Notes under the pieces: generated by a model
The model's database searches: none
The model's input: the letters and a program-made list of their open reading frames with translations, nothing else
What the model was told of the DNA's origin: nothing
Part shown: one piece after another, positions 34,535-58,074 of the stretch
How the letters are laid out: each line of letters starts with the position of its first letter
How positions within the stretch are numbered: the first letter of the stretch is position 1
Translations under genes and position numbers: made by a program
Assembly (NCBI RefSeq): GCF_032444005.1
Contig: NC_091287.1
Coordinates: 36,580,001 to 36,644,000, forward strand
Origin: Ranitomeya imitator
Lineage: Eukaryota
Length of the DNA stretch: 64,000 nucleotides
Direction: 5' to 3'

Positions 34535-35407
34535 TTATTTTTTCTCCGTTTTTTTCATGGATCCAGGAAGAGTTTTTGTCATTTTTTTCACAAGCGATTT
34601 CTTTACTTTAACTTTACGCTTCTTTTTTGGGTTTGGGACGATCTTCTTAACTTTTAGCTCCTGCAGCTTCACATCTGGCGGACGCTCAGAGGGGGAGAAT
34701 TTCCGTTTTCTGGAGGGAGTAGGAATAACGATTTTCTCCTCTTCAGATTCAGAGTTTTCCACTGAAACACAGACATCTTCAATTTGCCCAAGTCCGGTCG
34801 GTAGCCAAGGAACATGTAGAGGGGGAACTCGTGCCTTTATCGCTAACACTTGCTCTCGAAACACATCAGAGCTTTTTCGGAAGCCCAGTGCCAGCACAGA
34901 CTTCAGGCCGAGAGCTGGAGCCACGTTCTCGCTGAGTCGCGGCAGCTGACACGCAGGGGCCTCCCGGCTGTAGCTGAGCTCTATGATGTGCCTTGTGATC
35001 ATCTCCGGCTTTGCAGACTTACACACCATCACCATGTCCAGGTCATTCTTCTCCAGGGCCCGGGTGACCTCATTAATCCCTATGGCCAGCTGTTTCCTGA
35101 GATCTGCATAAGTCCAACCTGTCTTCTGTGCCTCCTTCTCCTCCGGGATCTCTGTGTCGGCGACTTTCTCTTTGTTTCCATCAGAAAGTTTTCCTTTTTT
35201 ACCCTTTTTGCCCTTTGATAATCTTGTATGGTTCTCTATCTTTTTTAGTCCAAGTTCCTCAAACTTTTTCAGTAAAGTCTGGAGGATGAACTGCATGTCA
35301 TCTCCAACCACCGGGGTCCAGATCTTCTCATATGGGCTGTTTAGAGACGTCTTCGACACAATTGGCTTTGATTTCCGTATGGGCCCTTTGGGGGTCTTGG
35401 CTGCCAT
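34535..35407 (-). CDS. RPP38: Ribonuclease P/MRP subunit p38, intact single coding exon (290 aa)
   Basis: KTSLNSPY, DMQFILQTL, L7Ae-type core LAIGINEVTRALEK...PACQLPRLSE...GLKSVLALGF, Lys-rich tail. Convergent with NMT2 as in other vertebrates. Splice acceptor (TTTTTTTTCTAG) at 35427-35428; AATAAA on - at 34426-34431. Confidence 0.95.
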   Translation of the reverse strand: MAAKTPKGPIRKSKPIVSKTSLNSPYEKIWTPVVGDDMQFILQTLLKKFEELGLKKIENHTRLSKGKKGKKGKLSDGNKEKVADTEIPEEKEAQKTGWTYADLRKQLAIGINEVTRALEKNDLDMVMVCKSAKPEMITRHIIELSYSREAPACQLPRLSENVAPALGLKSVLALGFRKSSDVFREQVLAIKARVPPLHVPWLPTGLGQIEDVCVSVENSESEEEKIVIPTPSRKRKFSPSERPPDVKLQELKVKKIVPNPKKKRKVKVKKSLVKKMTKTLPGSMKKTEKK

Positions 35408-38400
35408 GTTGTTGCTATTTTTTGCCCTAGAAAAAAAAAGAAATATATATTTTGATTAGTAGAGGAATATGTAATTCAACTCAACTCAACTCCATAAGTA
35501 GGAAGCTGACATTTTTCTGCAACACCTGAGGTTATGAGTAGCTCCAATCCCGGTTGTTTGTCCTTTAGATGCTATGGCCAAAAGCAAACAAGGCATCTAA
35601 GCAGTTAAAAAAAGGAAGAAGCTCCATAGGAGCCAATGGTACAAAGGGGTATCTGGTCTTCCTTGGCAACTAAGGGCCTGAGTTCAATGATCCTGTTTCC
35701 AGGTGTACCATCTTCTGAAAAAGGGAAGAGTCTCTAACTTGGGTGAGGATCACAACGTAATGCTCAGACTGGCCGGCGGCTGTCCTGACCCGAGCCTGAC
35801 CGCGTCATGTATTTCTATACAGCTTGCACGCTCAATTCATTAGAGCTGCCGGCCAGTCCGTGCACTGCGGTCTCATCTCACTTTAATTTATTTGGTCGTA
35901 TGACTGAACCTCCCACCAAAAAAATGTCTTGGGACTTGTTTTATTTGAAGACCTAGTTGTTCTGGATGACACCATTCATTTTACCATATAATTTAAAAGG
36001 GGTTGTCCAGATATATTAGGAAATTCTACAGTCACTCTACAGTGGCATATAAAGTTTGTGCACCCCTGGTGAAGATTACGGTTATTGCCAACAGTTAAGC
36101 AAGTTGAAGATGAAATGACCTCTAAAATGTCTAAAGTTAAAGATCACACATTTCATTTGTATTTTAGGCAAAAAATTTAAAAAAAAAAATGTAAACAAAA
36201 ATTACAAAACGGAAAGTGGGCCAATGCAAACGTTTGGGCACTCTTGGAGATTTGTGTGCTCAGATAACTTTTAAGGTCTGAAACCTTATTCAATGTTCAC
36301 CATTATGGTTAGGAAAGGCCAGGTGATGAAAATTTCCCAGCTTTTATAAAAACCCAGCCTCCTCTAACCTTTTGCTAAAACAGCAGTCATGGGTTCTTCT
36401 AAGCAGCTGCCTAGCCTATGAAAATGAAAATGGTGGAGGCCCACAAAGCAGGAGAAAGCTATAAGAAGAGAGCAAAGCGTTTTTAAGTTGCTCTTTCCTC
36501 AGTTCAAAATGTAATTAAGAAATGGCAGCTTACAGAAACAGTGGAGGTCAAGATAAGGTCTGGAAAACCAAGTCAAATTTCAGTGAGCGCTGCTCGTAGG
36601 ATTGCTAAAGAGGTAAATTAGAACCCTCGCTTGACTGCAAAAGACCTTCAGAAAGATTTAGAAGATTCTGGAGTTGTGGTACATTGTTCTACTGTTCAGA
36701 GACACCTGCACAAATATGGCCTTCATGTAAGAGTCATCAGAAGAAAACTTCTCCCGTGTCCTCACTATCAAATTCAGAGTCAGAAGTTCGCAAAAGATCA
36801 TCTAAACAAGCCTGATGCATTTTGGAAACAAGTCCTGTGGACCAATGAAGTAGAGCTCTTTGGTCACAATGATCAAAGGTATGTGTGGAGGAAAAAAAAT
36901 AAACCATCTTGCCAACCATTAAACACGGAGGTAGTTCAATCATGCTTTGGGGTTGTGTTTCAGCCAATGGCACGGGGAACATTTCAGGGGTAAAGGGAAG
37001 AATGAATTCAATTACATTTGAACAAATTGATGCAAACATAACACTATCTGTAAAAAAGTTGATGTTGAAAAGAGGAAGGATTCTAGAAATGGATAATGAT
37101 CATAAACACACGTCAAAATCCACAATAGACAACCTCAAAAGGTGCAACCTGAAGGTTTTACAATGGCCCTTACAGTCCCCTGATCTGATCATCATAGAAA
37201 TCTGTGGCTAGACCTCAAAATAGCAAAGGATGCAAGATGACCCAGGAATCTCACAGAACTGGTATGATTTTCAAAGGAAAAATGGATGAAAAACCCTCAA
37301 AAATAGGGATTTTTGTGTACTCACCGTAAAATCCTTTTCTCCGAGCCATTCATTGGGGGACACAGACCATGGGTGTATGCTGCTGCCACCAGGAGGCTGA
37401 CACTAAGTAATACAAAGAAAAAGTTAGCTCCTCCCCTGCAGTATACACCCTCCTGCTGGCTCCCAGCTAACCAATTCGGTGCAAAAGCAGTAGATCAATA
37501 ACGACATATAAGCGTAAAGCATGTCACATTATATATAAGAGTATAACATATCAAAAGATAAAAACAAAGCATAAGCTAATAACCGGGTGGGAGCTGTGTC
37601 CCCCAATGAATGGCTCGGAGAAAAGGATTTTACGGTGAGTACACAAAAATCCCTATTTCTCCTTCGCCTCATTGGGGGAGACAGACCATGGGACGTCCCA
37701 AAGCAGTCCCTGGGTGGGGACAACATCACTTCAGGCCGTGTAGCCGCTAATTACAAGTGCGCCACCGCGGCCTGCAAAGTCCACCTGCCCAGACTCACAT
37801 CTGTGGAAGTGAGTGAATTATAGTGCTTCAAGAATGCATGCGGCCTGGAGGAATTCGCAAGCCTGCGGTCGTGCTTGCCGACGTCTGGCGCCTAGAGCCC
37901 TCAGACAGGGAGATAGGCTGGCATCTAGCGCGAAAGGACTCCTGGATGGAGAAAAGAATCCACCAGGCTAACGTGGCCGAAGAAAAACGGCTAAACCCTT
38001 CCTGCGACCGTCAGGAAGTCTACTTACCATCGAAAAACCCGAGTAAAATGTCCAACCTTTGGAAGGACGTCGTCCTCGATACGTACCCACTCGGAGCACT
38101 CGCTTCTTCCAGATTATGGAGAACCCATTCCGCTTTGTGGACTAGAGCCGAAGGAGATGAGAGGACGATGCCCCTGCAACAGTGGAGATATAATACCCCT
38201 TGGCAACGAGGGAAGGGGATGGCTAGAGGGCAACCTTGCCTTGAAGGTAATAAGGAAAAAAGATAAAGAACACAGCGTCGAGATCTGAAGACTCATCAGG
38301 AGGACAAGAATGCAGAGAAAGAATGGGAGAGACCCTCCCTGATAGAAAAGTCTATCCGGATCAGAAAAGGAGTCCACTGTAAGATGCCCAGGACCATTAA

Positions 38401-40659
38401 GGTCCCACGGATTTAACGGTACGCAGTAGGGAAGAACTACAGGTTGAGGCCTGCAAGAAAGACCATATTTCCAGCTTGAGACAATAAGCTGGAAAAATAC
38501 TAGTACCGCAAGCGAGAAAAAAAACCTGACATGGTCAGTGCGGGTCTCCCGGGATCACTGGGGCCCTACCCGCTTCCGAAAAGGTTTCAGACGTAGTGGA
38601 AGAGGGGTTATGGAAATTGGTACCATGGAAGAATAGATCATGCACTGCAATGGTCTTGGATCGCGAGGCCAAACCATGAACTGGAGTACATTGGCGTTCA
38701 GCTTGGACGCCATCCGAACTACCTCTGGAGTACTCCAGTGAAGGCAGGTCCGATGGAAGATTTCCGAGTGAAGTTCCCACTCACTTGAGGAAAAACCCGG
38801 ACGGCTGAATATGTCTGCCGTCCAGTGTTCTACTCCAGGGAATGTACTGTTGAGATCACCGAAGATAGAACTCGGCCCATCAGAGAGTGCGAGGTACCTT
38901 AGCCATGGCGCTTGACTGAGGGTACTTGCTAGATGGCTAACTTGGGGCACAGCCGAGACATTATCCAACTGAAGACCCGCCAGAAGGCAGAGGGCCTGCT
39001 GAAGGAATAGCCGTACCGTTCGGATCTACAGAGAGATGATCGGGAGAAGAAAACTGGCAATGGTATCTCCCAATAGCCCTTGGGCCAGGAGAAGGCTCTG
39101 GAAGAGAAAGGAGCTCAGAGACTACCCTTTGAGAGCCTGATTGACTTGCAGAAAACGAGCGCAGCGAAGGAAACTGCTTCCGTAGACGTCCTTTCCCTCA
39201 GAACCCTCCTAGCGAATTGAAAGAACCGAGGGAATGAGAGATCGAGTGCGCAAGCTCCCTGTAGAAGGGCCACGACCTAGACCCGAGAGAGAATAACCAT
39301 CCTTCTTGGGCAGGATCATCCTCAAAGAGGATCTGCTGGGCTGAGAATGAGGGAAAAAAACTTGTCTAAGTTTAGCTGCTAGCCCAATAGAGAGGTAATT
39401 GCAAGTGATATGGACGACTCAGCGTAGTCCTAGGAGAGCGGCTACAAAGTCGACCAAATAGGGCAGGACGACCATGCTTCTAAGGTGCCAGAAGAACATG
39501 ACAACCGTCATGACCCTTGCGACCACTCTGGTGTGGTAGCCAGGCAGAAGGGCCAGGTCGTGAAAATACTGTTCGCGAATGGAAAGGCGAAGAGATTATA
39601 GTGGAGAGGAGAAATAGGTATGTGAGGGTAAGAATCCCGAATGACGATGGATGCCAGAAAACAACCACGTTTCTCTGTTGAAGTAGTGGCTGAGCGGAGG
39701 AACTCCATCCGAAAAAAGAAAGGGCCCTGTCAAAGGTTGTTAGAAGTTTGGGGTCCAGGAATGGAGATACTTTTCATTCCCTCCATTTTGGAACCAAGAT
39801 CCCTTAGATCTAGACTGTCCTGGCCAATGCTTCCACTGCTGGTTGAGCCTGAAGAAGAGATACGATCCCTTGCTAGTCTCCCGCTCAGAAGATTTGATTG
39901 GCCAGCTATACTGTGGAACGAAGTAGATAAGGTCTGGGACCCGGAGACTTTCATTCTCTCCCTTTGGTCAAGCAACCCATGTGGCGGCTAAGGAAGGGTA
40001 GAGCGCTGAACCCGAAACCACAAGATGGAACGAACTAGATTTTCTATCCGACCGTCTGTGGAATCTTAATTGATGATACACCGGCTAGGATACTGGTAGG
40101 AATACCGCAAGAAATTCTGCCCGGCAAGTCTGCCAAGTGACAGAATGCGGGACTGTAACCAGCAGGTCTCTGCCATCGTCGTGCAGAGAAGAAAATAAGG
40201 AAAAAACCTCGATCCACCATCTTCTTAACAGGGAAGTGGAGAGGAATCGTCCACTTTCTTGCATCTGATACAAAGGGGGGAAAACCTCCTTGTTGGGACG
40301 CCACAAATGTGGACGCCACATCCCCAGAATTGAGGTTTCTGAGTGGACAGGGCAGGTTGTGGCGATAGACCTGGATGCAGAAGAAGATACATGGAGGCGA
40401 CACTCCGTGTGCTCGTCTGTTGAAGGTGTGGGGGGAAATCGGAGCCCTTTAAGGGACCCGTCGCCCATAAAATTCCGACCAGGTATGGTATCCTACTTAG
40501 AGGTCTTCCAGTGCATCACCGTCAAATGTTGATGGAGATTTTCTAGAACCTGTACGTTTTTCTAGAATACTTGCGGCCCCTGCTAGCCGACGGCTCCCAT
40601 TGTAGGAGAGGGAGCATGTGAGTGCTCCAGAGCTCAGTTAGGGTGACCAGCTTAGGATA

Positions 40660-41585
40660 GATGATGTGCCCTTAAGACCAGTAAATACTGGTCATGCGCC
40701 TTTAAGGCTAGGGGTTACTGGCCATGAGCCTTTAAGACCAGGGAATACTGGTCTTGTGCCTTTTGTAAGATGACATACTGTTCATGTGCCTTTAAAAGCA
40801 GGGCATGCTGAAATCCAGGAGATAATGGTCATGTGCCCTTAAAACCAGGGTATGCTGGTCATTTGCGTTTAAGACCAGGGCGTACTGGTCCTGAGCCTTT
40901 AAGTCCAGGGCATAATGGTCACGTGCCTTAAAGACCAGGGCATACTGGTCGTGTGCCTTTAAAAGCCAGGGCATACTGGACATGAGCCTTTAAGACCAGG
41001 GCATACTGGTCATGTGCCTTGAAAACCAGGACGTACTAGTCATGTGCCTTTAAGACCAGGGCATACTGGTTATTGCGTTTAAGACCAGGGGATACTGGTC
41101 ACGTGCCTTTAAGACCAGGGCATACTGGTCATGGCCTTGAAAAACCAGGACGTACTAGTCATGTGCCTTTAAGACCAGGGCATACTGGTTATAGCGTTTA
41201 AGACCAGGGGATACTGGTCACGTGCCTTTAAGACCAGGGCATACTGGTCATGTGCCTTTAAGACCAGGAAATACTGGTCACGTGCCTTTAAGACAAGGGC
41301 ATACTGGTCATGTGCCTTTAAGACCAGGGTATATTGGACACGTGTCTTTAAGACCAGGGGATACTGGTCACGAGTCTATAAGACCAGGGCATGCTGGTCA
41401 CGTGCCTTTAAGACCAGGAATACTGGTCATGAAAGGAATGTTGGAACAAGTGCCTTAAAGACCAGCAAAGCTGGTAATGTGCCTTTAAGAACAAGAATGC
41501 TGGTCATGCTCCTTTAAGACCAGGGATGCTGGTCATGTGCCTTTAAGACGAGGGCATACTTGCCATGTGCCTTTAAGACCAGTGC
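40660..41585. repeat. 30-bp minisatellite GTGCCTTTAAGACCAGGGCATACTGGTCAT inside DIRS
   Basis: About 30 diverging units; 10-aa periodicity (VPLRPGHTGH). Confidence 0.92.
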
Positions 41586-41659
41586 CTACTGGCCTGATTA
41601 AGTACTAAGGAAAAGGAGACCGGCTTCTGGCAGAGCAGAGAATGCTGGGGATGTGACCC

Positions 41660-42079
41660 GAGTTTGCATCTCGGCTTTGGGAAAATGGCCGCCGCGATCT
41701 CTAATGCGCACGCGCGGCATCCCGCGGCCATTTTCCTGAAGCCCCGTGCAGCAGAGCACTCGATCTGCGCACGCGCGGCCCCAGGAAGATGGCCGCCCCC
41801 ACCGACGAAAGGGATGACAGCGCAGATCGCGCGCTGTGTCTTCACCACTACGCCACTACGCCACCAACGTAAAGCTGAGGAAGAACCAGCGATGTCACCA
41901 CGCCCTCCCGACCTGACCAGCCTGATTGACAGGCGAAAACGGCGACTTTGGTAAGTTATTTCTCAGCATACATGGGGAATCGGGGTACACTACATACACT
42001 ATAGGAACACACAGCGCAGGCCCTATTTAACAGTATTTATAGCTCAATCTCAAAAAACGGGGTGACAGGTTCCCTTTAA
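41660..42079. mobile_element. T2/Kolobok-like MITE right arm inside DIRS
   Basis: Ends GGTGACAGGTTCCCT-TTAA; reverse-complement homologue of 28421-28870. Confidence 0.8.
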
Positions 42080-44084
42080 GTATATAAAAAACAGGGAAAG
42101 CTAGTCCCTTAATGCTGCCGGGATGCGTGCCGGGGGGGGAGATATTGGGGCGATTCACCTTACTCAGGTTCTGAGTCCCCCGTCTGGAATAGCGCTGACT
42201 TCAGCGCTGAAAAACCGCCGGCCGCAGCCCCCTCCAGAAGAAATAGTGACCGCAATGGAGGAGGAAGAAGATGGCCGCCGAGATCTCGTCTGGAACGAGA
42301 AGCGCCTGAATAGGGGGGCGGAGCCGCTAGAAGGGAGCAAGCAGTGGGCGGGGCTTCCCGGGATGCGGCCTAAACAGGGCCGAAGCCGGGGACTAAATTT
42401 ATGGCTTCGGCCGGCGCGCACCCGCAGACTGAGGGGAAAAGTGCCGCGAAGCTCTATGGGGACCCAGTCGCTATGGAGCCCTCCTCTGACCGCCGGAAAA
42501 CCCAAATCTCACGGAGCACTTACCCCAATATGGAGGGGGTGGCAGATGCTGCAGGTAGGAGCTGTGCCCGGGTAGATAGGACGGTGCAGGGTTGGGGAGC
42601 CTCCATCCACCATCCCTGCAGAAGAGGGGTGGAGAGGAACCGTCTGCCTCCTTCCATCATCCGCTTTTTCAGTGGTGATGCAGTGGGGGCTGCTCGGACG
42701 CCACGTTGGAAGGTGCCTCTGTACAGCCGAGGGTAAAACCTGGTGGACAGGGCTGAATGTCCGGCTATAGGCCTGGCTGCAGAAGAGGATACTGAAGGTG
42801 AAACTCCAGTGCTCGTCTGATAAGGGAGGGGGGAGATCGGTGCCCTTGAAGGGGCCCGTCGCCCCTAAAATCAGCTCAGGCAGTGGCTTCCCACGTCGCA
42901 GGAGAGGATACGGAGAGGTAAAACTCCCGTGCTCGCCTGTTGATGGTTCGAGGAGATCGGAACATGAAAGAATCCGTCGCCCCATTCGACCGTAGTAAAA
43001 AGTAAAAAACGGTAAAAAAAAGTTCTTTGGGTCTGAATAGCAGACCCGTCCGTGTGCCTCCTACGGACACTAAGCAAGAACTGGTTAGCTGGGAGCCAGC
43101 AGGAGGGTGTATACTGCAGGGGAGGAGCTAACTTTTTCTTTGTATTACTTAGTGTCAGCCTCCTGGTGGCAGCAGCATACACCCATGGTCTGTGTCCCCC
43201 AATGAGGCGAAGGAGAAATTATTTATTATTATTATTATTTCATCTTCAACTCGCTTAACTGTTCACAATAACAGTAATTTTGACCAGGGGTGCCCAGACT
43301 TTTACATGCCACTGTATGTGACTGCAGACTTGTGAAACTTCACATCGTGCACCATGCGCGCTGTGAGGATTCTCCAGTGTTGCCACAGTCAGACTAGATG
43401 TGCACGGCCTCGCTCATTTCACTTGTATGGCAGGAAGTATGGCTGTCGCATACTTGTGGTCACATCCGCGGTCTCGCAGCTGGCACTGGAGGGTCCTCAC
43501 AGCACGCGCTGCAAATGCTGTGAGGTTTCACAGGTCTGCAGTCACATACAAGGACTGCAGACTTTCATGAAAAACCTGGACTACCCCTTTAATGAAAAAC
43601 GTCAAAAAGAATTCTAGTGAAAAAGGCAGAAATGTATAGTATTTTGGGTTTTGTTTTTATGACATTCTTTGTGCATTATGAAATCTATAGGGAAAATGCA
43701 ACAAAAAAAAAAAAAGTTGACATTTATGGGCTGCATCGCCGGTCAGTTTACACAGGGCCTCCAATATTAAAATTCACAGGGGGACATTATGCATTTCTAC
43801 TGTAGCCAGAGAACGTGTCCACCTGTGGTCTTCAATGTGTCTCTTTAAGGCCTAGTTCAGAGGTTTGTTTCTACACGTGTCCTACCCAAGAAAAACCGGG
43901 ATGTTATAAGTACATGAAAAGCAGACGTATCAGTCTATAGAGCTGTTCACTTGTCCATGGGTTTTTTGGGGGTCTGTGTGTATGCAAAAAAAATAAAAAT
44001 CTGTAGACATGTCTGTCTTTTGTTATCTATAATGAAAAGAACCTAGCACTCAACTTGATGCTTTTAGTGCATAATTTATTGTAG

Positions 44085-44138
44085 TAGTACCCAAACGTTT
44101 CGGTCCTTCATAACGGACCTTCATCAGTAAACGTACTA
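44085..44138 (-). ncRNA. Identical hammerhead ribozyme copy on the - strand
   Basis: Exact reverse complement of 44324-44377 within the left arm. Confidence 0.7.
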
Positions 44139-46762: not shown

Positions 46763-48688
46763 TTTTTTTTGCAAAAATGAAATGCCACAAAAAAGGGATG
46801 AAAATCAGATCCAGCAAACTGATGAAAATGGTCCATGTGAATGATGTCAAAGTCAAGATTTAGAGGTCAATATAGGCAAAAAATGGCCAGTCGCATATCT
46901 GAAATGCGGACGTGTAGTCATTGCATACCCTACAAGGGTCTGTAATCTGGACCAGAATAGTGCATGCTGCCATTTTTTATTTCTATCTGGACCATTGGTC
47001 TTGGGTGCTGCCCGTGTGTGGTGCATCGCGCATGTAGCATCGAGCGCTCCGGTGTATGGGAAAGACGACAGATGGCGGGCAGACAAATTACCATCTAATG
47101 TGTATGGGGGGGGGGGTCTTAAGTTGTTTGCGGTACATGATTCAGCATCTTCTTTCTAAAAGAACACCATGGTCCAATTAGGTGATGTTGGGGGTCAGTG
47201 TCCCAAACTACGTATTGTCTATACCGCTACTGGTACATGCGTGAACCTTTCTGCACGTGGCAGTGGAGGGACGCTTGGCCGTCCTATGTCTGTTTAACGC
47301 AGTCCCAGGACTAAGTTTCTTGCACCGTCCATGTCTGCACAGAGAATCTTCTGCCCAAAGGAAGGCTGACGACATAAGGTGTGGAGATGCCAGCGACCAG
47401 GATCAGTGGGCTTCCCAGAGGCAGGACACAACTGATCATATTGTAGCGATATGCCATCAAGATAGGAATACCCAAGTTTTAATACAGACCTTTGAAAAGG
47501 ATATCTGGGGATTCCGTGTTCCAATATGAAGGCCGTCAGTAATGGAGGAACTAATTTCTTTTTCCTCTTGGGTTTTCGTATTAATCAATATAGAGGGAAG
47601 AAAAGGTAACGCCTTGGAAAATTACTCAACATCTGTAGCAGTTTTATTATACATCCCGACACAAGGAAACACAACAGTTTTTGTTCCAATCCCTGGAAAT
47701 CCAGCTTTAAAAAAATAAAATAAAAAAACACAACAACTGTAGTCGCAGGTTTAGAAATATAATAAAGAAACATCTTATTTTTTTCTCCGTGTTTTTATGG
47801 ATCCAGGAAGAGTGTTTTATATTTTTTCATCAGCGATTTCTTTACTTTAAATTTCTGCTTTTTGGGGCGGTTTGGGACGATCTTCTTAACTTTTAGTTCC
47901 TGCAGCTTCACATCTGGCGGACGCTGGGGGGGGGGAGAAGGTTTCTTTTCTGGAGGGGGTCAGAATAACGCTTTCCTCCTCTTCCGACCCATCATCTTCC
48001 ACTGTAACATAGACATCTTCATTTTGCCCACATTCGGTCGGTAGACAAGGGACATGTAGAGGGGGGATTCGTGCCATTATTGCTAACACTTGCTCTCTAA
48101 ACACATCAGAGCTTTTTCGGAAGCCCAGTGCCAGCACATGCCTAATCCCGAGAGCTGGAGCCACGTTCTCGCTGAGCCGCGGCAGCTGACACGCAGGGAC
48201 CTCCCGGCTGTAGCTGAGCTCTATGATGTGCCTGGTGATCATCTCCGGCTCTGCAGACTTACACACCATCACCATGTCCAGGTCGTTCTTCTCCAAGGCC
48301 TTGGTGACCTCATGAGTCCCTATGGCCAGATGTTTCTTGAGATCCGCAAAGGTCCAACCTGTTTTCTGAGCCTCCTCCTTGGTCTTCAGGTTGTCGATTT
48401 TCTTATTGATTTCATCCGAACGTTTTGCTTTATTACCCTTTTTGGATTTTGCTTGGCCCTTCATCTTTTTCATTCCAAGTTCCTCAAACTTTTTCATTAA
48501 AGTCTGCAGGATGGGGCGTGGCCTAGCGAGCGATGTGAGCGGACGTGCGACGGATCTCTCTCCCCGCACCGCTCCTAAATCCCCACCCTTGAAGGCGCCG
48601 CCGAGCGCCGAAAACCGGGCGAAGTTGCTCCGCAGGACCCCTGGGCACGGAGGAGAGTGCCGGAGGCAGCGAAAGGAGAAGAGCGGTA

Positions 48689-49810
48689 ATGCCGCGCAAA
48701 AGACAGTCAGCGCCCGCGGCTGGCGCGAAAATCCAAGATGGCGCCGTGGCAGAGGAGGAGGCGGCCAGAGCCAGCACCGCATACCGCCGGAGGCTTGAGG
48801 TAATCGCCAGGCTGGAGCGGTTTGCTCGGACAGAGGAGGGGGGTGCCCTGCTGCTGGGCCCTGAGGGGCCAGATGAGGAGGAAGTCCCGCAGAGACAGGA
48901 GAGAGGAGGGGATGACACCCTCAGTGTGGTGGAGGAGCGGCTTTCTCCAGGGAAGAGGCAGGAGATGCAAGAGACAACTAACATGTCACCCACCGCCAGT
49001 CCAGTGCAGGCTAAGGACTCTGAGGGTGCGCAGCAATCAAACGTGGGGGAACCTACACTGCAGGACATTTTCTCAGTCGTTATACACTGCAAATCTGCCC
49101 TGGCTGCGCTGAACCTAAGGGTAGACGATTTAACAGTTGAAATGAAGTCCCTTAATTCTGCTATGCGTAAAGTGGAGAAAAGAGTGGAGGTGGTGGAGGA
49201 GCGCGTGGGCAGTGTGGAAGATCAGACAAATGAACTGTTGAAAAGAGAAAAGAGATACATTCAGCGCACTGCAGAACTGGAATTTAAAACAGATGACCTG
49301 GAAAATCGTTCCCGTAGGAACAATCTAAGAATAATTGGGGTGCCGGAGAAGGTGGAGGGGAATAATCCTACGGAATACATTGAGGCATGGCTCAAAAACT
49401 CGGTGGGAGGAGCAGACCTTACCAACCACTTTTCCGTGGAAAGGGCCCATAGAGTCCCCACCCGGCCCCTGCCGCCTGGATCCCCCCCTCGAGCTCTGCT
49501 GGCAAAAATTTTGGACTATCGGGACCGGGAAACCCTACTAAGGAAGGCCAGGATCAGTGACGGACTGAGCATAGACGGAAATCGGATCTCCATTTATCCG
49601 GACTACTCGGCATCGGTGCAGAAACTGAGAATGAGGTTCGGCGAGGTCAAGAGGCGGCTCCGAGACCTGGACCTAAAATATTCGATGTTATACCCGGCTA
49701 AGCTCAGGGTGGTGGCGCTGGACCGTGTTCATTTTTTCCAGAACCCGGAGGAGGCTATGCACTGGCTAGATACCAATACTAAGAAAATTGGCGTGGATCG
49801 GAGCCGATGA
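48689..49810 (+). CDS. L1 ORF1p (373 aa)
   Basis: Coiled coil, LENRSRRNNLRIIGVPE, ERAHR, RRM/CTD, YSMLYPAKLRV. Confidence 0.96.
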   Translation: MPRKRQSAPAAGAKIQDGAVAEEEAARASTAYRRRLEVIARLERFARTEEGGALLLGPEGPDEEEVPQRQERGGDDTLSVVEERLSPGKRQEMQETTNMSPTASPVQAKDSEGAQQSNVGEPTLQDIFSVVIHCKSALAALNLRVDDLTVEMKSLNSAMRKVEKRVEVVEERVGSVEDQTNELLKREKRYIQRTAELEFKTDDLENRSRRNNLRIIGVPEKVEGNNPTEYIEAWLKNSVGGADLTNHFSVERAHRVPTRPLPPGSPPRALLAKILDYRDRETLLRKARISDGLSIDGNRISIYPDYSASVQKLRMRFGEVKRRLRDLDLKYSMLYPAKLRVVALDRVHFFQNPEEAMHWLDTNTKKIGVDRSR

Positions 49811-50151
49811 GACTGACGCTGAGACTTCGTCACTCATTTGTTTATACCCCCTGATGGTGATTTTTGAACTTGTCTTACAGAATGCACCCAAAAGTTTGAA
49901 ATAATGTGCTCGGCGGCGCAAAGAATATTTCATGTTGATAGCGGTGGGAGGGGGAGAGATGGACTGCAAGTGGCTCAGTTCTAGGTTGTATCAAGAGCTC
50001 TCAGTTCTCATACAGAGAAAGAAAGTTTGTACTAGTTGAATTCTATTGAGTTTTAGATGGGGAAGTTGGGAAAGGGGGATGGGAGGGGGTGGGGGGGTGT
50101 CGGGGGAGACCTGAAGGAGACTGCTCTAACTCATTGTTTTTTCTCTAGAAA

Positions 50152-53100
50152 ATGGGAGGGGACGTTAATATTATAAGCTGGAATGTTAGGGGGTTAGCGG
50201 ACGCCACTAAGCGCACGGCAATATTTCAGTATCTTCTGAAACAGAGGCCCTCGGTGATCTGCCTGCAAGAAACCCACCTAGTGGAGGAAAAAGTTGATAT
50301 ATTACAGAAACGGTGGGTGCGCAAGGCGTATCATTCGACGTTCTCTAGTTACGCGAGGGGAGTGTCAGTCTTAATTCACACTAATACCCCATTTGAGGAA
50401 GTGGAGGTTAAAATTGATACGGATGGTCAATACGTTTTGCTAGTGTGTAAAATCTTTGACTGTTTAATGTGCATAGTATCATTGTATATACCTCCGCCAT
50501 ACTCTGGAAGGAAGATCCAGGACATATTGGAGGCTATAAGAGGTTGGGATGGGATCCCCCTTCTGGTGGTGGGTGATGTAAACAATATAGCAAATGACCA
50601 CTGGGACAAGAGTAACCACGCATCACAGCGCAGGGACGGTAATGACACTCCCTTTGGTAACTATCTCAGAGAAATTGGTTGGATTGATTTATGGAGGGTC
50701 CGCAATGCCAATACATATTCCTATTCCTGTTACTCGACTACATACGGCTCGATGTCAAGAATTGATGTTGCCTTGGGTAACGATAGGATGAACGAACTGT
50801 TAAACGGGGTGGAATATAATCCCAGGATTTTATCAGACCATAGCCCAGTTCGGGTCTCTCTAAAGTTGTCAGGTCAGGTTGGTTTGAGGAGGGCGGGTTG
50901 GAAAATTCACCCAGTCTGGCTACAAATTTTGGACATGGCAAAGGTGGGAGTAGAGATAGAGGAATTTTTCAAAATTAATGAAGGGAGCGCGGAATGCCAT
51001 GTAGTGTGGGACACCATGAAAGCTTATTTAAGGGGAATTTTGTTTAGGGATATCTCAAGACATAAGACAAGGACCAAAGAGCGGGATCAGGGCGTTCTAG
51101 AGGAGTTGAAAGCAGCAGAGGCGGCATTGGGGGAACATCGTACCGGGGAATCTCAGAGTCGTATGAGGGCAGCTCAGCGGGAGGTCGATCAGTTATTTTT
51201 GAAAAAGGCGGAGAGGTTGAGGGCCTTCCAGAGAGAAACTTTCTACTCGGAGGGGGAGAAAGTGGGGCACTTGCTCTCGGTAGTGGCATCCGCGCAAAGA
51301 GACTCTTCACATGTTTACTCTATTAAGACGGAGGAGGGAACGTTGGTTACTCAGGGGGAGCAGATCCTGGAAGTGTTCAGGAAATTTTATGGAAAATTAT
51401 ATACGTCCAGTGTGGAGAAGGGATCCGAGGATATGGAGAGGTACTTGGAAGAAATTGATATGCCCCGGTTGAGTAGAGAGGAGTGTGAATTATTGGAGGA
51501 ACCGATTGGGGAGGAGGAATTGGGGGTGGCTTTGGCAGGTGTTGCGGGGGGTAAGGCCCCGGGAGCGGACGGCATTCCAGCTGAGGTTTATAAGACCTTG
51601 AAAGAAACTCTGTTGGCCAGGCTGGTGGGGGTGTACAATAGCTCGCTGGAAAGAGGGGAGTTGCCTTTGTCGATGAGAGAGGCTATAGTGGTGGTTATCC
51701 CTAAGGCTGATAAAGATCCACTGATGCCAGAATCCTATAGACCAATTTCACTATTGACTGCCGATATTAAGATTTTGGCAAAAGCCTTGGCAAATAGGTT
51801 GAGTAGGGTGATAGACAAATTGGTGCACCCTGACCAGTCAGGCTTCATGCCTAACAAGTCAACGGCAATCAACCTGAGAAGGTTGTTCTTAAATTTACAA
51901 ATCCCTTCAGATAATGCTGGCAAACGGGTTGTGGCATCTTTGGACGCCCACAAAGCCTTTGACTGTGTGGAGTGGAGTTATCTGTGGACAGTGTTGGAAC
52001 GTTTGGGGTTTGGACCTAGGTTCATCTCATGGGTGCGGCTGCTGTATTCTTCCCCGGTGGCAAAGGTAAGGGTGAATGGCGTCCTCTCTGAGACTTTCTC
52101 TTTGTCTAGGGGGACTAGACAGGGCTGTCCTTTGTCCCCACTGCTTTTTGCCCTGGCGGTGGAACCCCTTGCTGCAAAAATTAGAGGCTCCCGGGAGGTG
52201 AGGGGATTTATGTACGGGGATTCGGAAGAGAAGGTAGCGTTATACGCAGATATTTTGCTCTTCTTGGAGGATTCGGGGGAGTCCCTGACAGGGGCGGAGG
52301 CCATTATTGAAGAATTTGGGAGCTACTCTGGCCTGAGAATCAATTGGGAAAAGTCCAATATGATGTTAGTGGATGGGGATTATGAGAATAGTGCTATGAG
52401 GGAATCTCATGCAAAGTTGAGGTTGGTGGATAAATTTAAATATTTGGGGATTCAGATTGCGTTGCCTCTGACGAGTTTTGAGGAACTAAATTTGGCGCCA
52501 CTATTGCGGAAGATACGTATTAAGGTTCAGGCGTGGAAAAAGTTACACCTATCGGTCATTGGTAGAATAAATCTAATAAAGATGATTGTGATGCCGCAAC
52601 TTCTCTACGTGCTGCACAACTCCCCTATATGGATATCGCAGAATAGATTTCGGAGGATTAGATCTCAATTTGGCGAGCTGATTTGGGGAGGGAAAAGTCC
52701 TAGATTTAAACAGGAAATCCTACAAAGACCAAAGACGGAGGGGGGAGTGGCACTGCCCAACCCATGGTTATATTTTTTGGCTTCACAATGTCAGCATTTT
52801 AGGGGATGGGGTGTGGAATCGGGTTGGGAGCGGACACCCTGCAGTCTGAGGAAACTGATTGGGTCAAGGGTACTAGTTGAGGGTTTGGAGGGTGGGCATT
52901 TCCGAGAGAAGGGGACTAAATTTTGCACTGTTAGGCTCATCCATAAGGTTTGGGACAAAGTTAAAGGAATTAGGGGTGTGAGGACACTTACTAGGTTTTC
53001 GCCCATATGGAATAATTGTCTCTTGCAGGAGTTTAGACAGATGGAGGGATTCCATGTTTGGAAGGGAGCGGGAATCTCTCGGATAAGCCAAGTTTTGCAC

Positions 53101-53901
53101 CAAGGTAGAATTAAGAATTTTGAAACACTACAGGAGGAATTTCAGCTGCCAAGCTCTGAATTGTACCAATACAACCGCATCTCTCATGCATATCGGGCAC
53201 AATGTAAGAAGGGGCCTATGGAGATCCAGGTGGATCTAATGCTAGATTTTATCCTCATAGGGGAAGGCACGAAGGGGGTGATCTCAGGAATATATGAATT
53301 TCTTCTATTTTCCTTTTTAGAGGGGCACCCTATCAGAGCTAGAGCAAAGTGGGAGGCAGACCTGGGGGTGATTGACGGCGATCAGTGGGACTCAATATTG
53401 GAATACGTGCACAGGATCTCGATGAGTGAGCCTGGGAGGCTGTCACAGCTGTTGGTCATTCATAGGGCTTATAGAACTCCGGACATGTTGTATAAAGCTG
53501 GTCTAAGACCTAACTCCGAATGCCCTAGGTGCTCGCAGTCCGAGGCGGGTATCCTCCATATGATGTGGCAGTGCCCCAGGTTATCCTCGTTTTGGATCGT
53601 GGTGCTAAATAAAGTGGGACTAACATACAAATGTTCGATACCACGGGATCCTTTGGTATGCATATTGGGTTACGTAGAGGAGATTGTAACTGATAACTCG
53701 TACAAAATAGTCATTGCAAGATTGCTGTTTATTGCTCGAAAGTTGATCGCTAAGTTTTGGATAAGGGTAGAGCCACCAACGAGAAGTGATTTCATGACAC
53801 AAGTGGACTATATCGTGGCATTGGAGAAGAGCATTTATTCTAAAAGAAACAAGATGGACCTCTTCAACAAGTTGTGGAATCCTTGGCTCAAGTCGGCGTG
53901 A
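50152..53901 (+). CDS. L1 ORF2p (1249 aa): APE endonuclease, RT, CCHC; YADD reduced to YAD
   Basis: SWNVRGL, LQETH, SDHSPV; YRPISLL, LDAHKAFD, RQGCPLSPLLF, LYAD-ILLF, FKYLGI; CPRC-x7-H-x4-C. Confidence 0.97.
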   Translation: MGGDVNIISWNVRGLADATKRTAIFQYLLKQRPSVICLQETHLVEEKVDILQKRWVRKAYHSTFSSYARGVSVLIHTNTPFEEVEVKIDTDGQYVLLVCKIFDCLMCIVSLYIPPPYSGRKIQDILEAIRGWDGIPLLVVGDVNNIANDHWDKSNHASQRRDGNDTPFGNYLREIGWIDLWRVRNANTYSYSCYSTTYGSMSRIDVALGNDRMNELLNGVEYNPRILSDHSPVRVSLKLSGQVGLRRAGWKIHPVWLQILDMAKVGVEIEEFFKINEGSAECHVVWDTMKAYLRGILFRDISRHKTRTKERDQGVLEELKAAEAALGEHRTGESQSRMRAAQREVDQLFLKKAERLRAFQRETFYSEGEKVGHLLSVVASAQRDSSHVYSIKTEEGTLVTQGEQILEVFRKFYGKLYTSSVEKGSEDMERYLEEIDMPRLSREECELLEEPIGEEELGVALAGVAGGKAPGADGIPAEVYKTLKETLLARLVGVYNSSLERGELPLSMREAIVVVIPKADKDPLMPESYRPISLLTADIKILAKALANRLSRVIDKLVHPDQSGFMPNKSTAINLRRLFLNLQIPSDNAGKRVVASLDAHKAFDCVEWSYLWTVLERLGFGPRFISWVRLLYSSPVAKVRVNGVLSETFSLSRGTRQGCPLSPLLFALAVEPLAAKIRGSREVRGFMYGDSEEKVALYADILLFLEDSGESLTGAEAIIEEFGSYSGLRINWEKSNMMLVDGDYENSAMRESHAKLRLVDKFKYLGIQIALPLTSFEELNLAPLLRKIRIKVQAWKKLHLSVIGRINLIKMIVMPQLLYVLHNSPIWISQNRFRRIRSQFGELIWGGKSPRFKQEILQRPKTEGGVALPNPWLYFLASQCQHFRGWGVESGWERTPCSLRKLIGSRVLVEGLEGGHFREKGTKFCTVRLIHKVWDKVKGIRGVRTLTRFSPIWNNCLLQEFRQMEGFHVWKGAGISRISQVLHQGRIKNFETLQEEFQLPSSELYQYNRISHAYRAQCKKGPMEIQVDLMLDFILIGEGTKGVISGIYEFLLFSFLEGHPIRARAKWEADLGVIDGDQWDSILEYVHRISMSEPGRLSQLLVIHRAYRTPDMLYKAGLRPNSECPRCSQSEAGILHMMWQCPRLSSFWIVVLNKVGLTYKCSIPRDPLVCILGYVEEIVTDNSYKIVIARLLFIARKLIAKFWIRVEPPTRSDFMTQVDYIVALEKSIYSKRNKMDLFNKLWNPWLKSA

Positions 53902-56155
53902 TCTGGAGATTGTTTTCTAGTTTTTTGGGTACTCTGCCCCCGTGGGAGCAGTATTGACATGACACCTTCCTGTTCTTGGTTAAGGATAGACGTTTGGGAG
54001 GATCGGAGTGGTTCTTCTTGGGTCTCCGGGGATGGGGGGGAGGGGAGGGGAGGGAAGCTGGTTTGGGATTAAAAAGTTTATTGAAAATGCAGAACATATG
54101 TATGTACTGTTTACAGCAATGTAATCTACTTATATTTTTCTTACTGTTTAATAAAAATATTAGATTAAAAAAAAAGTCTGCAGGATGAACTGTATGTCAT
54201 CTGCAACCACCGGGGTCCAGATCTTCTCGCTAGGGCGTGTATTAGACACAATTGGGTTGGATTTTTGCATGGGCCCTTCGGGGGTCTTGGATGCCATGTT
54301 GCTGCTGTTTTTTTTCTCCTATAAAAAAAATACATATATATATATTTTTTTTTTTTCCCCATCAATAGAGACATATGTAATAAATTTCCTGACTTTTACG
54401 ACATCTGGAAACTCTAAACTCCAGCAATAGCAAGGTGACATTTTCCAGCGACACCCGAGGTCAGCGCCAGCTCCAATCCCTGTCGTTTGTCCTTTAGATG
54501 CTATGGCCAAAAGCAAATATGGCATCTAAGCAGTTAAAGAAGCTCCATAGGTGCCTGAGCAATGTTATCAAGGGGTGTCTGGTTTTCCTTGGCAACTGAG
54601 GACCTGAGTTCTACCATTTTCGGACAACCTCCACCGCGAGAAGGGATCGTTTACAGCTTCCGTACCATCTTCTGAATAAGGGAAGAGTCACAAACTTGGA
54701 CGAGGATCGCAACCAAATGCTCGGACTGGCCGACGGCTCTCCTGACATGAGAGTGTGTTATGCCGGCGTCCCTGCATGGGTCCTCTCTCTTCCCTAGGCA
54801 GGGACACCACCTCAATCGCCTAGCTGTGTCCTCTGCTCCAGCGCCCCAGGAACCTGATCGCTGTGCAGATCTGACTGCGTGCTTAGGATGCGAGCAATCC
54901 CCGATTCTTAAAGGGTTTGTGCACGCACTCCTGATCTGTTCCCCTATCCAAAAGCTGGGAAACGAGAAGTATTTAAGGCACATTCCCCTGTAGGGAGGTG
55001 CCTGAGCCATATTAGTGTTTAGTTAGTCTTCAAGTTGTTAAAGGGAACCTGTCACCTGAATTTGGTGGGACAGGTTTGCGGTCATATGGGCGGGGTTTTT
55101 GGGTGTTTCATTCACCCTTTCCTTAACCTTTCATACTGTGTCCTCTGAAGTACAAGCCTGCGCAAGGCAATCTTGCCATGCGCAGTATGCGTTGCCCAAC
55201 TGTGGGCAAAGCCGAAAAACATTAGTGCGCATGCGCCAGCGCACTATGTCCCGTAACACAGCGAAATACTTCCGGGACATATTGCGCCGGCGCATGCGCA
55301 CTAAGGCTTTTCAGCTTTACCCGCAGTTGGGCAAAGCATACTGCGCGTGCGCAAGGCAAGATTGCCTTGCGCAGGCGTGTACTGCGGAGGACACAGCATG
55401 AACTTCAACCCAATACCGGTGTAACGTTCCAGTACCCACACTGTCTGGACCAGCTTCAGCACCCAGTCCTGCTCTGGACTCCGAATCTGCATTGTGGACT
55501 CCGAAGCCGCAGTCTGAACCAGCTTTAGCATCCGTTCCCCCCCGGGGCTCAGACTCTGTGTCTGTTGTGACCGCGGCCCTGACCCTTTTATAGAATATCT
55601 AGGGGCCTCCTGAGTGAATCTCAATGTGTAAAAACAGATGTACCAAAAAATGTAAGAAAAAAAATACAAACTCAAGAACTGTCAGGTTTTTCCATATTTT
55701 GCCCCCAAAAATGTTATGAACAGAAATCAAAACATCATATGCACCCCAAAATGGTACCATGAAAAAAATCAGCTTGTCTCACACCAGAAAAAAACGAGTC
55801 TTCAAGAAAGACAGAAAATGGCAGCAGAAATTGTATGATTTTTTTGCAAAATAAATACCGTAAAAGCAAAACCCAAAATATAAACATAATGCATCATTTC
55901 CAATAAATTATTTCTGTCACTTGGTGATTATAGATACAAATATTTACTGCTGTCTTTCCCTTCTGGCTCTAAACTGGCAGTTGAAAAAGTATGGTATATG
56001 TGTGGAAACCATCAGCAAGGAGGAACAGAGGAGTGACTATTCTCCAGTACCAAATGCTGAGAGCGTGCTGGGTATTGTAGTGCACATAACGTAGGTTACA
56101 TTGCTTATTTCTCGTACAGCGCTATGTTCACGTTATTCTGACAAACACCATAATA

Positions 56156-56360
56156 ACTCACCGGCCGCTCTCGGTCCCATGCACCGATCGCATGGACCGC
56201 ACGCTACTGATACTAAAAGCAGCCAATCAGAACGCGCGGTCTACGCTGCGTTCCAAGTTTTCAATACATTTTGGAACGCAAAACAGGAAGTTATATCTGA
56301 TTGGTCGGTTCTAGTCCGACACCGAGGCTGTAGATCCGGGGATTGTGGGAGATGTAGTTT
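56156..56360 (-). promoter_or_regulatory. RPP38: Probable RPP38 promoter and non-coding exon 1
   Basis: On -: ZNF143/Staf-like AAACTACATCTCCCACAATCCCC (56337-56360), CCAAT boxes (about 56222, about 56300), ETS GGAAGT (about 56286), CpG-rich stretch, then donor CCG|GTGAGT at 56161. It lies 1.84 kb upstream of the copy-2 acceptor. TSS not determinable. Confidence 0.65.
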
Positions 56361-57972: not shown

Positions 57973-58074
57973 ACTGCCGTCTAACTGCGACAAAGATGTA
58001 CTAAGATTTGTTGTTTTTTTTGCAGGACTAGTTGCTGTTCTGAATGACTCCATTCATTTTACCATATAATTTAA

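What the first reader, a model, noticed from the sequence alone, without database searches (positions are those of the whole stretch)
34535..56360. The intact RPP38 exon appears promoterless; the only recognisable promoter belongs to the L1-killed copy
Seen: upstream of copy 1, sequence aligns to copy 2's intron (35430-35790 with 54320-54750) and then jumps to 57844-58120. The 3.12-kb interval missing from copy 1 lies between two same-orientation MITE-like copies (GACTGGCCG.CGGCT.TCCTGAC at 54724 and 57844; hybrid at 35767). That interval contains the ZNF143/ETS/CCAAT promoter and exon-1 donor (56156-56360). Both acceptors are intact (35427, 54319), and the distal one has the cleaner pyrimidine tract. 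Copy 1 nonetheless keeps an open frame and the conserved motifs. Known: RPP38 is a subunit of RNase P/MRP, which is essential. Inference: exon 1 splices across about 20.7 kb, skipping the dead paralogous exon and the L1, so a tandem duplication became a shared-promoter alternative terminal-exon system. Otherwise a TE supplies a new promoter.
Basis: partly seen in the sequence, partly recalled or inferred. Interest (0 to 1): 0.9.

Follow-up and report, generated by a model that had tools for sequence, protein, structure and literature searches.

The report
One promoter, two RPP38 exons
In the mimic poison frog the RNase P subunit gene RPP38 carries two duplicated coding exons behind one promoter; a jumping gene (L1) has destroyed the near exon, and the intact far one is apparently reached by a 20.7-kb splice, which the public annotation already models, so this is a tidy example rather than a surprise.

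Summary
The window is Ranitomeya imitator, at the ACBD7-RPP38-NMT2 locus. Copy 1 (CDS 34535-35407, minus strand) is an intact 290-aa RPP38. Copy 2 is split at codon 41/42 by a full-length plus-strand L1 (48514-54172) with a perfect 15-nt target-site duplication. The only promoter-like block and exon 1 (donor at 56162) lie upstream of copy 2.

Copy 1 lacks 54747-57843. The switch point lies inside a MITE. So copy 1 lost its promoter.

RefSeq isoform X1 (307 aa) reads MRSVHGTESGR, encoded at 56193-56164, fused to copy 1's exon. RNA-like contigs from four studies cover copy 1 exactly up to its acceptor. Two run on for 45 and 67 letters that lie nowhere in 34350-40349; those letters were not shown, so their origin is unread.

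The architecture predates the L1. R. variabilis and Dendrobates tinctorius keep an intact copy 2 nested inside copy 1's coding span, and in R. variabilis NCBI calls both isoforms of one gene.

Verdict: a new member of a known kind, already annotated. Interest is moderate to low.

The parts
34535..35407 (-). Copy 1 coding sequence: intact 290-aa RPP38 with the stop codon included. It is the only intact RPP38 seen for this species.
   Evidence: ORF list. Pfam L7Ae PF01248 and Pop3 PF08228. 100% match to P0001. Best named hits are vertebrate RPP38.
34409..35426 (-). Copy 1 terminal exon as covered by RNA-like contigs. The acceptor AG is at 35428-35427 and the AATAAA signal at 34431-34426.
   Evidence: Contigs from runs X15 and X19 lie on 34409/34411-35427, and those from X1 and X3 lie within the exon. 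X15 and X19 run on 45 and 67 letters beyond the acceptor. Acceptor and poly(A) signal were read.
35427..56161 (-). Intron of 20,735 bp between exon 1 and copy 1's exon. It holds the dead copy 2, the L1, a Tc1-like composite element and satellite arrays.
   Evidence: CDS span of the RefSeq model P0121 together with the peptide mapping.
35743..35882 (.). Hybrid MITE with long terminal inverted repeats. Its left flank is homologous to copy 2's intron and its right flank to the region upstream of the promoter.
36040..43315 (+). A 7.28-kb Tc1/mariner-like composite insertion in copy 1's upstream flank. It has a TA target duplication, ends of the form CAGTGGCATA...TGCCACTG, and nested elements that include a roughly 420-bp MITE at 37300-37718.
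   Evidence: The empty site at 58104-58125 was compared with the filled site. Inverted ends were found. There is a HTH_Tnp_Tc3_2 hit for 36631-36993.
43316..43600 (.). Continuation of copy 1's duplicated unit, homologous to 58116-58800 at about 80%.
47392..48513 (-). The 3' part of copy 2: coding sequence from codon 42 onward, the 3' UTR and AATAAA at 47648-47643. A C10 run at 47926-47935 shifts the frame in this assembly.
   Evidence: The older assembly's model P0125 is in frame over 708 nt.
48514..54172 (+). Full-length L1 of 5,659 bp, antisense to RPP38. ORF1 is 48689-49810 and ORF2 is 50152-53901. It has a poly(A) tail and a perfect 15-nt target-site duplication, AAAGTCTGCAGGATG, at 48499-48513 and 54173-54187.
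   Evidence: ORFs. Pfam Exo_endo_phos and RVT_1. Target-site duplication and junctions.
54173..54318 (-). The 5' part of copy 2's exon, with the ATG at 54297 and 41 codons. The acceptor AG is at 54320-54319. ATTAAA follows on the minus strand at 54152-54147, inside the L1 tail.
54747..57843 (.). The 3.1-kb interval present upstream of copy 2 and absent from copy 1. It holds the promoter and exons 1 and 1b.
55983..56012 (-). Start of the candidate exon 1b. It encodes MVSTHIPYFF..., the N-terminus of R. variabilis isoform X1. In R. imitator a stop closes this frame. A second M4 motif lies just upstream at 56081-56069.
56162..56228 (-). Exon 1, with its 5' end not mapped. An in-frame ATG lies at 56193 and the donor GT at 56161-56160.
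   Evidence: P0121 N-terminus. Exon-1 words are held by runs X22 (4 of 7) and X23 (2 of 7). The 67-letter overhang of the X19 contig fits this length but was not read.
56221..56358 (-). TATA-less housekeeping-type promoter block: an M4/ZNF143-type motif at 56358-56346, CCAAT boxes near 56306 and 56221, and an ETS core at 56284.
57821..57963 (.). Complete MITE upstream of the promoter, in the same orientation as the MITE arm at 54700-54751 in copy 2's intron.

Best explanation
This is the ancestral RPP38 locus of Ranitomeya imitator, flanked by ACBD7 and NMT2.

Before the Phyllobates/Dendrobates/Ranitomeya split, a unit was duplicated in tandem. The unit ran from about 0.7 kb below the stop codon to about 2.5 kb above exon 1. 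The downstream unit (copy 1) then lost 3.1 kb holding the promoter and exon 1. The breakpoints lie in two same-orientation MITEs, so recombination between them is the likely cause.

Since then, one promoter and one exon 1 at 56.2 kb have served two alternative terminal coding exons: the proximal copy 2 and the distal copy 1. Copy 1 is the slowly evolving copy and so presumably the indispensable one.

In R. imitator a young full-length L1 landed antisense in codon 41/42 of copy 2 and destroyed it. RPP38 protein now comes from copy 1 alone. Exon 1 is joined to the acceptor at 35426 across a 20.7-kb intron that contains the dead exon, the L1 and copy 2's old poly(A) site.

Shown directly: the anatomy, the L1 insertion, splicing at copy 1's acceptor, the annotated junction, and the intact nested copy 2 in relatives.

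Inferred: the MITE recombination, the order of events, and that exon 1 is the main rather than the only 5' exon.
For: Junction. P0121 is MRSVHGTESGR (56193-56164) followed by AKNSNNMAAK (35425-35396), with a CDS span of 21,659 bp.

RNA. About 20 small RNA-like contig sets from 6 studies hold copy 1's exon, 15 of them at half or more of its words and the best at 87-96%. Contigs stop matching at 35427 and continue for 45 nt (X15) and 67 nt (X19). Depth is zero at 35550-35749 in all four runs, and up to 35949 in three of them. No joint to any place in 34350-40349 is listed for them.

Single promoter. The M4 motif occurs only at 56358 and 56081, next to CCAAT and ETS motifs and a consensus donor.

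Loss in copy 1. Homology exists on both sides of the gap, and it resumes after the Tc1-like insertion.

Age. The eight dendrobatid sequences form one clade with 100/100 support. An intact copy 2 is nested in copy 1's CDS span in R. variabilis (8,904 bp) and D. tinctorius (19,293 bp). NCBI names the R. variabilis products isoforms X1 to X3 of one gene.

Copy 1 conserved, copy 2 fast. Between R. imitator and D. tinctorius, copy 1 is 94.1% identical and copy 2 is 74.5%.

Young L1. It has a perfect 15-nt target-site duplication and intact ORFs. R. imitator's copy-2 pieces are still 93.4% identical to R. variabilis copy 2.

No other R. imitator RPP38 appears among the 120 best hits listed.
Against: The letters of the 45-nt and 67-nt overhangs were not printed. 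My own RNA data therefore show a splice into 35426 from outside 34350-40349, but not that it comes from 56162.

Exon-1 words were found only in X22 and X23. They were absent from X3 and X9, which do hold copy 1. The test had only 7 sampled words, and transcript 5' ends are poorly assembled, so it is weak either way.

RefSeq isoform X2 (290 aa) must have a different 5' structure that I could not see.

An older annotation (P0122) instead joins a MITE-borne exon at 37353-37327 to the same acceptor.

The stretch 40350-47391 was not examined with RNA.

DNA of the relatives could not be fetched, so whether they share the 3.1-kb loss is inferred from gene models only.
Confidence: 0.82

Rival explanations
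1. Copy 1 is mainly driven by a nearer, TE-derived promoter or first exon. Candidates are the MITE-borne ATG-plus-donor exon at 37353-37327, or an element in the CpG- and CCAAT-rich repeats at 45.5-47.0 kb. On this reading the 56.2-kb exon 1 is a minor or annotation-only partner.
For: The older assembly's model P0122 starts MNGSEKRILR, encoded at 37353-37327, followed by a consensus donor ACG|GTGAGT. Exon-1 words are missing from two runs that hold copy 1. CCAAT-bearing, CpG-rich arrays lie at 45.5-47.0 kb. The stretch 40350-47391 was not tested with RNA.
Against: No contig joins 35427 to 37327 or to anywhere else in 34350-40349, although 45-nt and 67-nt overhangs were available to place. The 37.3-kb exon sits in the inverted terminal repeat of a high-copy MITE. 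P0122 is also a truncated, frame-broken 141-aa model, which looks ab initio. RefSeq's model uses exon 1. In two relatives the copy-1 models likewise start upstream of copy 2.
Confidence: 0.08
2. An antisense promoter in the L1 5' end (about 48.5-48.8 kb) drives minus-strand transcription. That would yield an N-terminally truncated copy-2 protein (the annotated 218/235-aa 'p38-like' gene), or transcripts that read or splice down to copy 1.
For: A 298-aa minus-strand ORF (47886-48782) runs from the L1 5' end into copy 2. RefSeq and the older annotation both call a protein starting at MKKFEEL, 48497. L1 antisense promoters are known in human L1; this is my own knowledge, not tested here.
Against: The RefSeq model P0031 needs a 46-nt pseudo-intron to step over the C-run frameshift. 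That points to a homology-built model rather than a transcript-built one. I obtained no RNA evidence for this stretch. The truncated product would lack the first 45 or so residues.
Confidence: 0.05
3. The arrangement is an assembly artefact: mis-joined or collapsed paralogs, or an L1 placed wrongly.
For: The region is repeat-rich, and the homopolymer length differs between assemblies (C10 here, C15 implied by P0125).
Against: An independent older assembly gives a copy-2 model starting at the same post-L1 methionine. It also gives the same 2,327-bp spacing from the 37.3-kb exon into copy 1. The L1 has a clean 15-nt target-site duplication at a TT|AAAG site. The window has no Ns. Three other species show the same gene order.
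Confidence: 0.03

Closest known systems
Alternative last exons that arose by tandem duplication, where one transcription unit carries two paralogous terminal exons
   Same: One promoter and first exon, and two mutually exclusive terminal exons that are paralogs, each with its own acceptor and poly(A) signal. NCBI files the R. variabilis products as isoforms of one gene.
   Different: Each terminal exon here carries a complete coding sequence, so the two 'isoforms' are whole paralogous proteins. In R. imitator only the distal one survives, so the choice is no longer between two proteins.
Vertebrate RPP38 (RNase P/MRP subunit p38, L7Ae family) at the ACBD7-RPP38-NMT2 locus
   Same: L7Ae and Pop3 domains. 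A single coding exon preceded by a short 5' exon. ACBP-domain and NMT genes as neighbours in the expected orientations, and the NMT C-terminus ...GLVLQ* at 25338. Human gene order is from my own knowledge.
   Different: It is single-copy in the other frogs sampled (Bufo). The dendrobatids have two tandem copies, and here the first intron has grown to 20.7 kb.
UGT1A and clustered protocadherin loci (variable exons spliced to shared exons)
   Same: Tandemly duplicated exons are chosen one at a time and spliced over the others, across long distances.
   Different: This is the mirror image. There, each variable first exon has its own promoter and the 3' exons are shared. Here the 5' exon and promoter are shared and the 3' coding exons vary. 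This comparison is from my own knowledge.
Exon-disrupting L1 insertions
   Same: Full-length L1, poly(A) tail, 15-nt target-site duplication and an endonuclease-type TT|AAAG target inside a coding exon.
   Different: The hit is tolerated because a paralogous exon downstream supplies the protein.

Membership tests
RPP38 (RNase P/MRP protein subunit p38) | L7Ae-type RNA-binding domain with Pop3/Rpp38 signature | tested here: met
   For copy 1, PF01248 scores 29.2 bits (cut-off 22.1) and PF08228 scores 28.5 bits (cut-off 22). For copy 2's remnant, PF01248 scores 34 bits, while PF08228 at 21.3 bits falls just under its cut-off of 22.
RPP38 (RNase P/MRP protein subunit p38) | Orthology: nearest named relatives are RPP38, at the conserved locus | tested here: met
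   692 hits at E<=1e-10, and the named ones among the 120 listed are mostly RPP38 from frogs to mammals. ACBP and NMT genes are the neighbours.
RPP38 (RNase P/MRP protein subunit p38) | Assembly into RNase P/MRP and binding of the RNA subunit | not testable with these tools
   This needs biochemistry.
Shared-promoter alternative-terminal-exon gene | A single promoter and first exon upstream of both terminal exons, and none directly upstream of the distal one | tested here: met
   The promoter block and donor occur only at 56.16-56.36 kb. Copy 1 lacks 54747-57843. RNA depth is zero at 35550-35749 in all four runs, and up to 35949 in three of them.
Shared-promoter alternative-terminal-exon gene | RNA junction from exon 1 to the distal exon (56162 to 35426) | tested here: inconclusive
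   The junction is encoded in RefSeq model P0121. My contigs show a splice at 35426 with 45-nt and 67-nt overhangs from outside 34350-40349, but their letters were not shown.
Shared-promoter alternative-terminal-exon gene | RNA junction from exon 1 to the proximal exon (56162 to 54318) | not tested
In R. variabilis, NCBI lists copy 2 as isoform X3 of the same gene.
LINE-1 retrotransposon insertion | ORF1 plus ORF2 with endonuclease and reverse transcriptase, a poly(A) tail and a target-site duplication | tested here: met
   PF03372 and PF00078 in the 1,249-aa ORF2. An A-run and a 15-nt perfect duplication.
Tc1/mariner DNA transposon (36040-43315) | TA target duplication, inverted ends starting CAGTG, and a Tc1-type transposase | tested here: met
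   Filled versus empty site. Inverted ends at 86%. HTH_Tnp_Tc3_2 at 40.6 bits. The transposase is fragmentary, so the element is dead.

The most novel reading that the evidence does not exclude
In dendrobatid frogs one promoter makes two whole, divergent RPP38 proteins through a choice of terminal exon. One is conserved. The other evolves several times faster yet has stayed open in at least three species, so it may have a specialised RNase P/MRP role. R. imitator would then be a natural knockout of the fast copy. Its remnant (intact acceptor plus ATTAAA in the L1 tail) may still trap part of the transcripts of the sole remaining RPP38.
Probability: 0.3. Interest if true: 0.5.

Novelty: new member of a known kind. 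Interest (0 to 1): 0.35.

Why it matters
The locus is a clean, datable example of how a tandem duplicate that loses its promoter survives by becoming an alternative last exon of its neighbour. It also shows how that redundancy lets a presumably essential gene absorb a full-length L1 in a coding exon. For annotators, it explains why NCBI calls the two copies 'isoforms' in one species and nested 'p38-like' genes in others. For RNase P/MRP biology, a second, fast-evolving RPP38 kept for tens of millions of years in poison frogs and lost in one species is a small open question. None of this overturns anything, and the key junction is already in RefSeq.

Tried and rejected
Exact look-up of the 290-aa product found nothing, because only a gene's longest product is on record. 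The 307-aa isoform did work.

DNA of the same locus in the older R. imitator assembly, R. variabilis, D. tinctorius, P. terribilis and Bufo could not be fetched because the files are too large. Cross-species statements therefore rest on proteins and CDS spans.

The exon-1 word search had only 7 sampled words and was weak.

Read laying was limited to 6 kb and one call. I chose the copy-1 side. The loose ends at 35427 fell among the 91 rows not shown, so their letters are unknown.

The reading that the 35767-36039 / 57844-58116 match is mere TE-family resemblance was rejected. The match continues past the MITE into unique flank, and it resumes after the Tc1-like insertion.

A bidirectional promoter shared with ACBD7 was rejected. 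The ACBD7 coding start is about 3 kb away, at 59258.

CpG density does not mark the promoter here, and the richest windows are repeats.

The count of M4 motifs alone is not significant: 16 of 100 shuffles reach 2. The argument rests on their clustering and strand.

No paper on RPP38 duplication in frogs was found. No earlier notes of this scan were found either.
Full report
**Identity of the window.** The 290-aa ORF at 34535-35407 (minus strand) matches at 100% a protein on a 577.7-Mb NCBI contig. The other members of its cluster are named 'ribonuclease P protein subunit p38-like' of Ranitomeya imitator. It carries the L7Ae and Pop3 domains. In NCBI's annotation of that contig, an ACBP-domain gene lies head-to-head about 3 kb upstream of the RPP38 coding start. 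An N-myristoyltransferase gene lies tail-to-tail downstream. The NMT C-terminus ...GLVLQ* reads at 25338. As far as I know this is the gene order around human RPP38, so this is the ancestral locus and not a stray copy. No other R. imitator RPP38 appears among the 120 best hits listed.

- Copy 1 and copy 2 align at 83.5% over the coding exon and 3' flank (34171-35288 with 47392-48513).
- They align at about 81-87% over the exon start and intron (35274-35789 with 54173-54746).
- Copy 1 then jumps to 57844-58116.
- The three-way alignment shows copy 1 following copy 2's intron up to the motif GACTGGCCG.CGGCT.TCCTGAC. From there it follows the sequence upstream of the promoter.
- That motif is the inner part of a roughly 140-bp MITE with long inverted ends. 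It is complete at 35743-35882 and at 57821-57963. Only its left arm is present at 54700-54751.

The homology does not stop at 36039. At that point a Tc1-like element begins (TA|CAGTGGCATA...). Its other end (...TGCCACTG|TA) is at 43315, and the empty site is preserved at 58104-58125. It carries a Tc3-type transposase fragment and nested elements. Beyond it, 43316-43600 again matches 58116-58800 at about 80%.

So the duplicated unit spanned the promoter region on both sides, and copy 1 has lost 54747-57843. Recombination between the two same-orientation MITEs is the simplest cause. It requires that the intronic MITE was once complete, and I could not check this in relatives.

**The promoter.** On the minus strand, 56358-56221 holds these elements:

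- an M4/ZNF143-type motif ACTACATCTCCCA;
- two NF-Y-type CCAAT boxes;
- an ETS core.

These are followed by an ATG at 56193 and the donor CCG|GTGAGT at 56162/56161. The M4 motif occurs only twice in the 64 kb. Both copies are on the minus strand and lie 277 bp apart. The second sits just before a stretch (56012-55983) that encodes the N-terminus of an R. variabilis isoform. The motif count alone is not significant. The clustering next to a consensus donor is what counts.

**The L1.** A 5,659-bp plus-strand L1 (48514-54172) sits between codons 41 and 42 of copy 2. It has an intact ORF1, and an intact 1,249-aa ORF2 with endonuclease and RT domains. It also has an A-tail and a perfect 15-nt target-site duplication at a TT|AAAG site. 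Copy 2's tail also has a C10 run that shifts the frame in this assembly. The older assembly's model implies C15 and is in frame, so that lesion may be a homopolymer error or a polymorphism.

**Is copy 1 expressed, and from where?** About 20 contig sets of 59-213 Mb from six studies hold part or most of copy 1's exon. That size is far too small for a multi-gigabase frog genome, so they are transcriptome-like. Fifteen hold half or more of the exon's words, and the best hold 87-96%.

Reads were laid on 34350-40349 from four runs of four studies. Single contigs cover 34409/34411-35427 and stop matching exactly at the acceptor.

- The X15 contig continues for 45 letters and the X19 contig for 67 letters that lie nowhere in the 6-kb stretch.
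- Depth is zero at 35550-35749 in all four runs, and up to 35949 in three of them (X3 has a little there).
- No joint to the MITE-borne candidate exon at 37353-37327 is listed.

So copy 1 is transcribed and spliced to an exon lying outside 35.4-40.3 kb.

The link to 56.2 kb comes from RefSeq. Isoform X1 (P0121, 307 aa) begins MRSVHGTESGR, encoded at 56193-56164. It continues AKNSNNMAAK..., encoded from 35425. The CDS span of 21,659 bp equals 56193..34535. An 11-codon exon joined across 20.7 kb has no protein homolog to suggest it, so I take it to be transcript-derived. That is an inference.

Exon-1 words were found in only two runs (4 of 7 and 2 of 7) and not in two runs that hold copy 1. With seven sampled words and poorly assembled 5' ends, this neither helps nor hurts much.

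**Relatives.**

| Species | Copy 1 | Copy 2 | Arrangement |
|---|---|---|---|
| R. variabilis | 289 aa (isoform X2); 322 aa (X1) | 273 aa, intact | Copy 2 nested in copy 1's CDS span of 8,904 bp; NCBI names the products isoforms X1-X3 of one gene |
| D. tinctorius | 300 aa (X2); 309 aa (X1) | 273 aa, intact | Copy 2 nested in copy 1's CDS span of 19,293 bp |
| P. terribilis | 289 aa | 264 aa, intact | A thioesterase-gene model spans copy 2 and ends 67 nt into copy 1's CDS |

The P. terribilis model implies a long-range splice into copy 1's acceptor there too.

The eight dendrobatid sequences form one clade against other frogs with 100/100 support. Copy 1 orthologs are 88.6-95.2% identical to R. 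imitator's copy 1. Copy 2 orthologs are only 74.5-79% identical outside Ranitomeya. In the window, copy 1 versus copy 2 gives dS 0.25, dN 0.14 and dN/dS 0.56, or 0.39 in the L7Ae core. Copy 2 therefore evolves fast but has stayed open in three species.

R. imitator's copy-2 pieces were read with X at the breaks. They are still 93.4% identical to R. variabilis copy 2, and their branch is no longer than R. variabilis's. Together with the perfect target-site duplication and the intact L1 ORFs, this says the insertion is recent. The separation of copy-1 and copy-2 clades is weak (54/78), and D. tinctorius paralogs are 87.8% alike, so some gene conversion is possible.

**Mechanism.** One TATA-less promoter fires at about 56.2 kb. 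The short exon 1 is spliced to one of two terminal coding exons. In relatives the choice yields two paralogous proteins. In R. imitator only the distal choice yields RPP38. The transcript must run through the antisense L1 and past copy 2's old AATAAA (47648-47643), both now intronic.

The dead exon keeps a good acceptor, and ATTAAA follows 25 nt into the L1 tail (54152-54147). It could therefore still capture some transcripts. This was not tested.

**Comparison and verdict.** This is an alternative-last-exon gene born from a tandem duplication, plus an ordinary exon-disrupting L1 insertion buffered by the paralogous exon. It is the mirror image of the UGT1A and protocadherin layouts. I found no paper describing it, but the key junction is already in the public annotation. 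The one correction is that the architecture predates the L1. I rate it a new member of a known kind, with moderate-to-low interest.

Noticed in passing
window 37300-37718, with a partial inverted copy at 43078-43205: A roughly 420-bp MITE has 65-bp perfect inverted ends, each carrying an ATG and a consensus donor (ACG|GTGAGT). Many RNA contigs begin or end exactly at 37300 and 37718, at very high summed depth. The family therefore looks abundant in transcripts and is a ready source of false or real first exons. The older annotation used one for RPP38.
   Followed up: partly
window 37750-40349: Tiled RNA contigs from three studies (X1, X3, X15, but not X19) cover this stretch inside the Tc1-like composite without a break. 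They share about 1% differences from the window. None of the four ORFs tested there has a Pfam hit. This may be a transcribed repeat of unknown type, or another copy of it elsewhere.
   Followed up: partly
window 58156-58800 and 43350-43600: A 125-143-bp tandem repeat carries a CCGGAAGT (ETS) core in each unit (58223, 58348, 58491, 58634). It lies 0.5-1 kb upstream of the ACBD7-like coding start at 59258. One unit was carried along in the RPP38 duplication. It may be part of the ACBD7 promoter.
   Followed up: no
window 47926-47935: The C homopolymer in copy 2's tail is C10 here, which shifts the frame. The protein model from the older R. imitator assembly implies C15, which is in frame. This is either an assembly error or a length polymorphism.
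   Followed up: partly
window 6200-8200: About 30 ETS-core matches (CMGGAAGT, minus strand) are spaced about 51 bp apart, with CCAAT motifs among them, in a region of strong negative GC and AT skew. This is a 51-bp satellite inside the NMT2 gene range.
   Followed up: no
window 33535-34150, 40815-41592, 44751-45609 and 45868-46218: There are several tandem arrays, with periods of 90, 30, 21 and 54-71 bp. The last is CpG-rich with paired CCAAT/ATTGG motifs. They fill much of the space downstream of copy 1 and between the two RPP38 copies.
   Followed up: no
P. terribilis locus (no DNA held): NCBI's thioesterase (OLAH-like, 262 aa) model has a CDS span that runs across RPP38 copy 2 and ends 67 nt inside copy 1's coding sequence. 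That suggests read-through or long-range splicing from a gene beyond ACBD7 into copy 1's acceptor.
   Followed up: no
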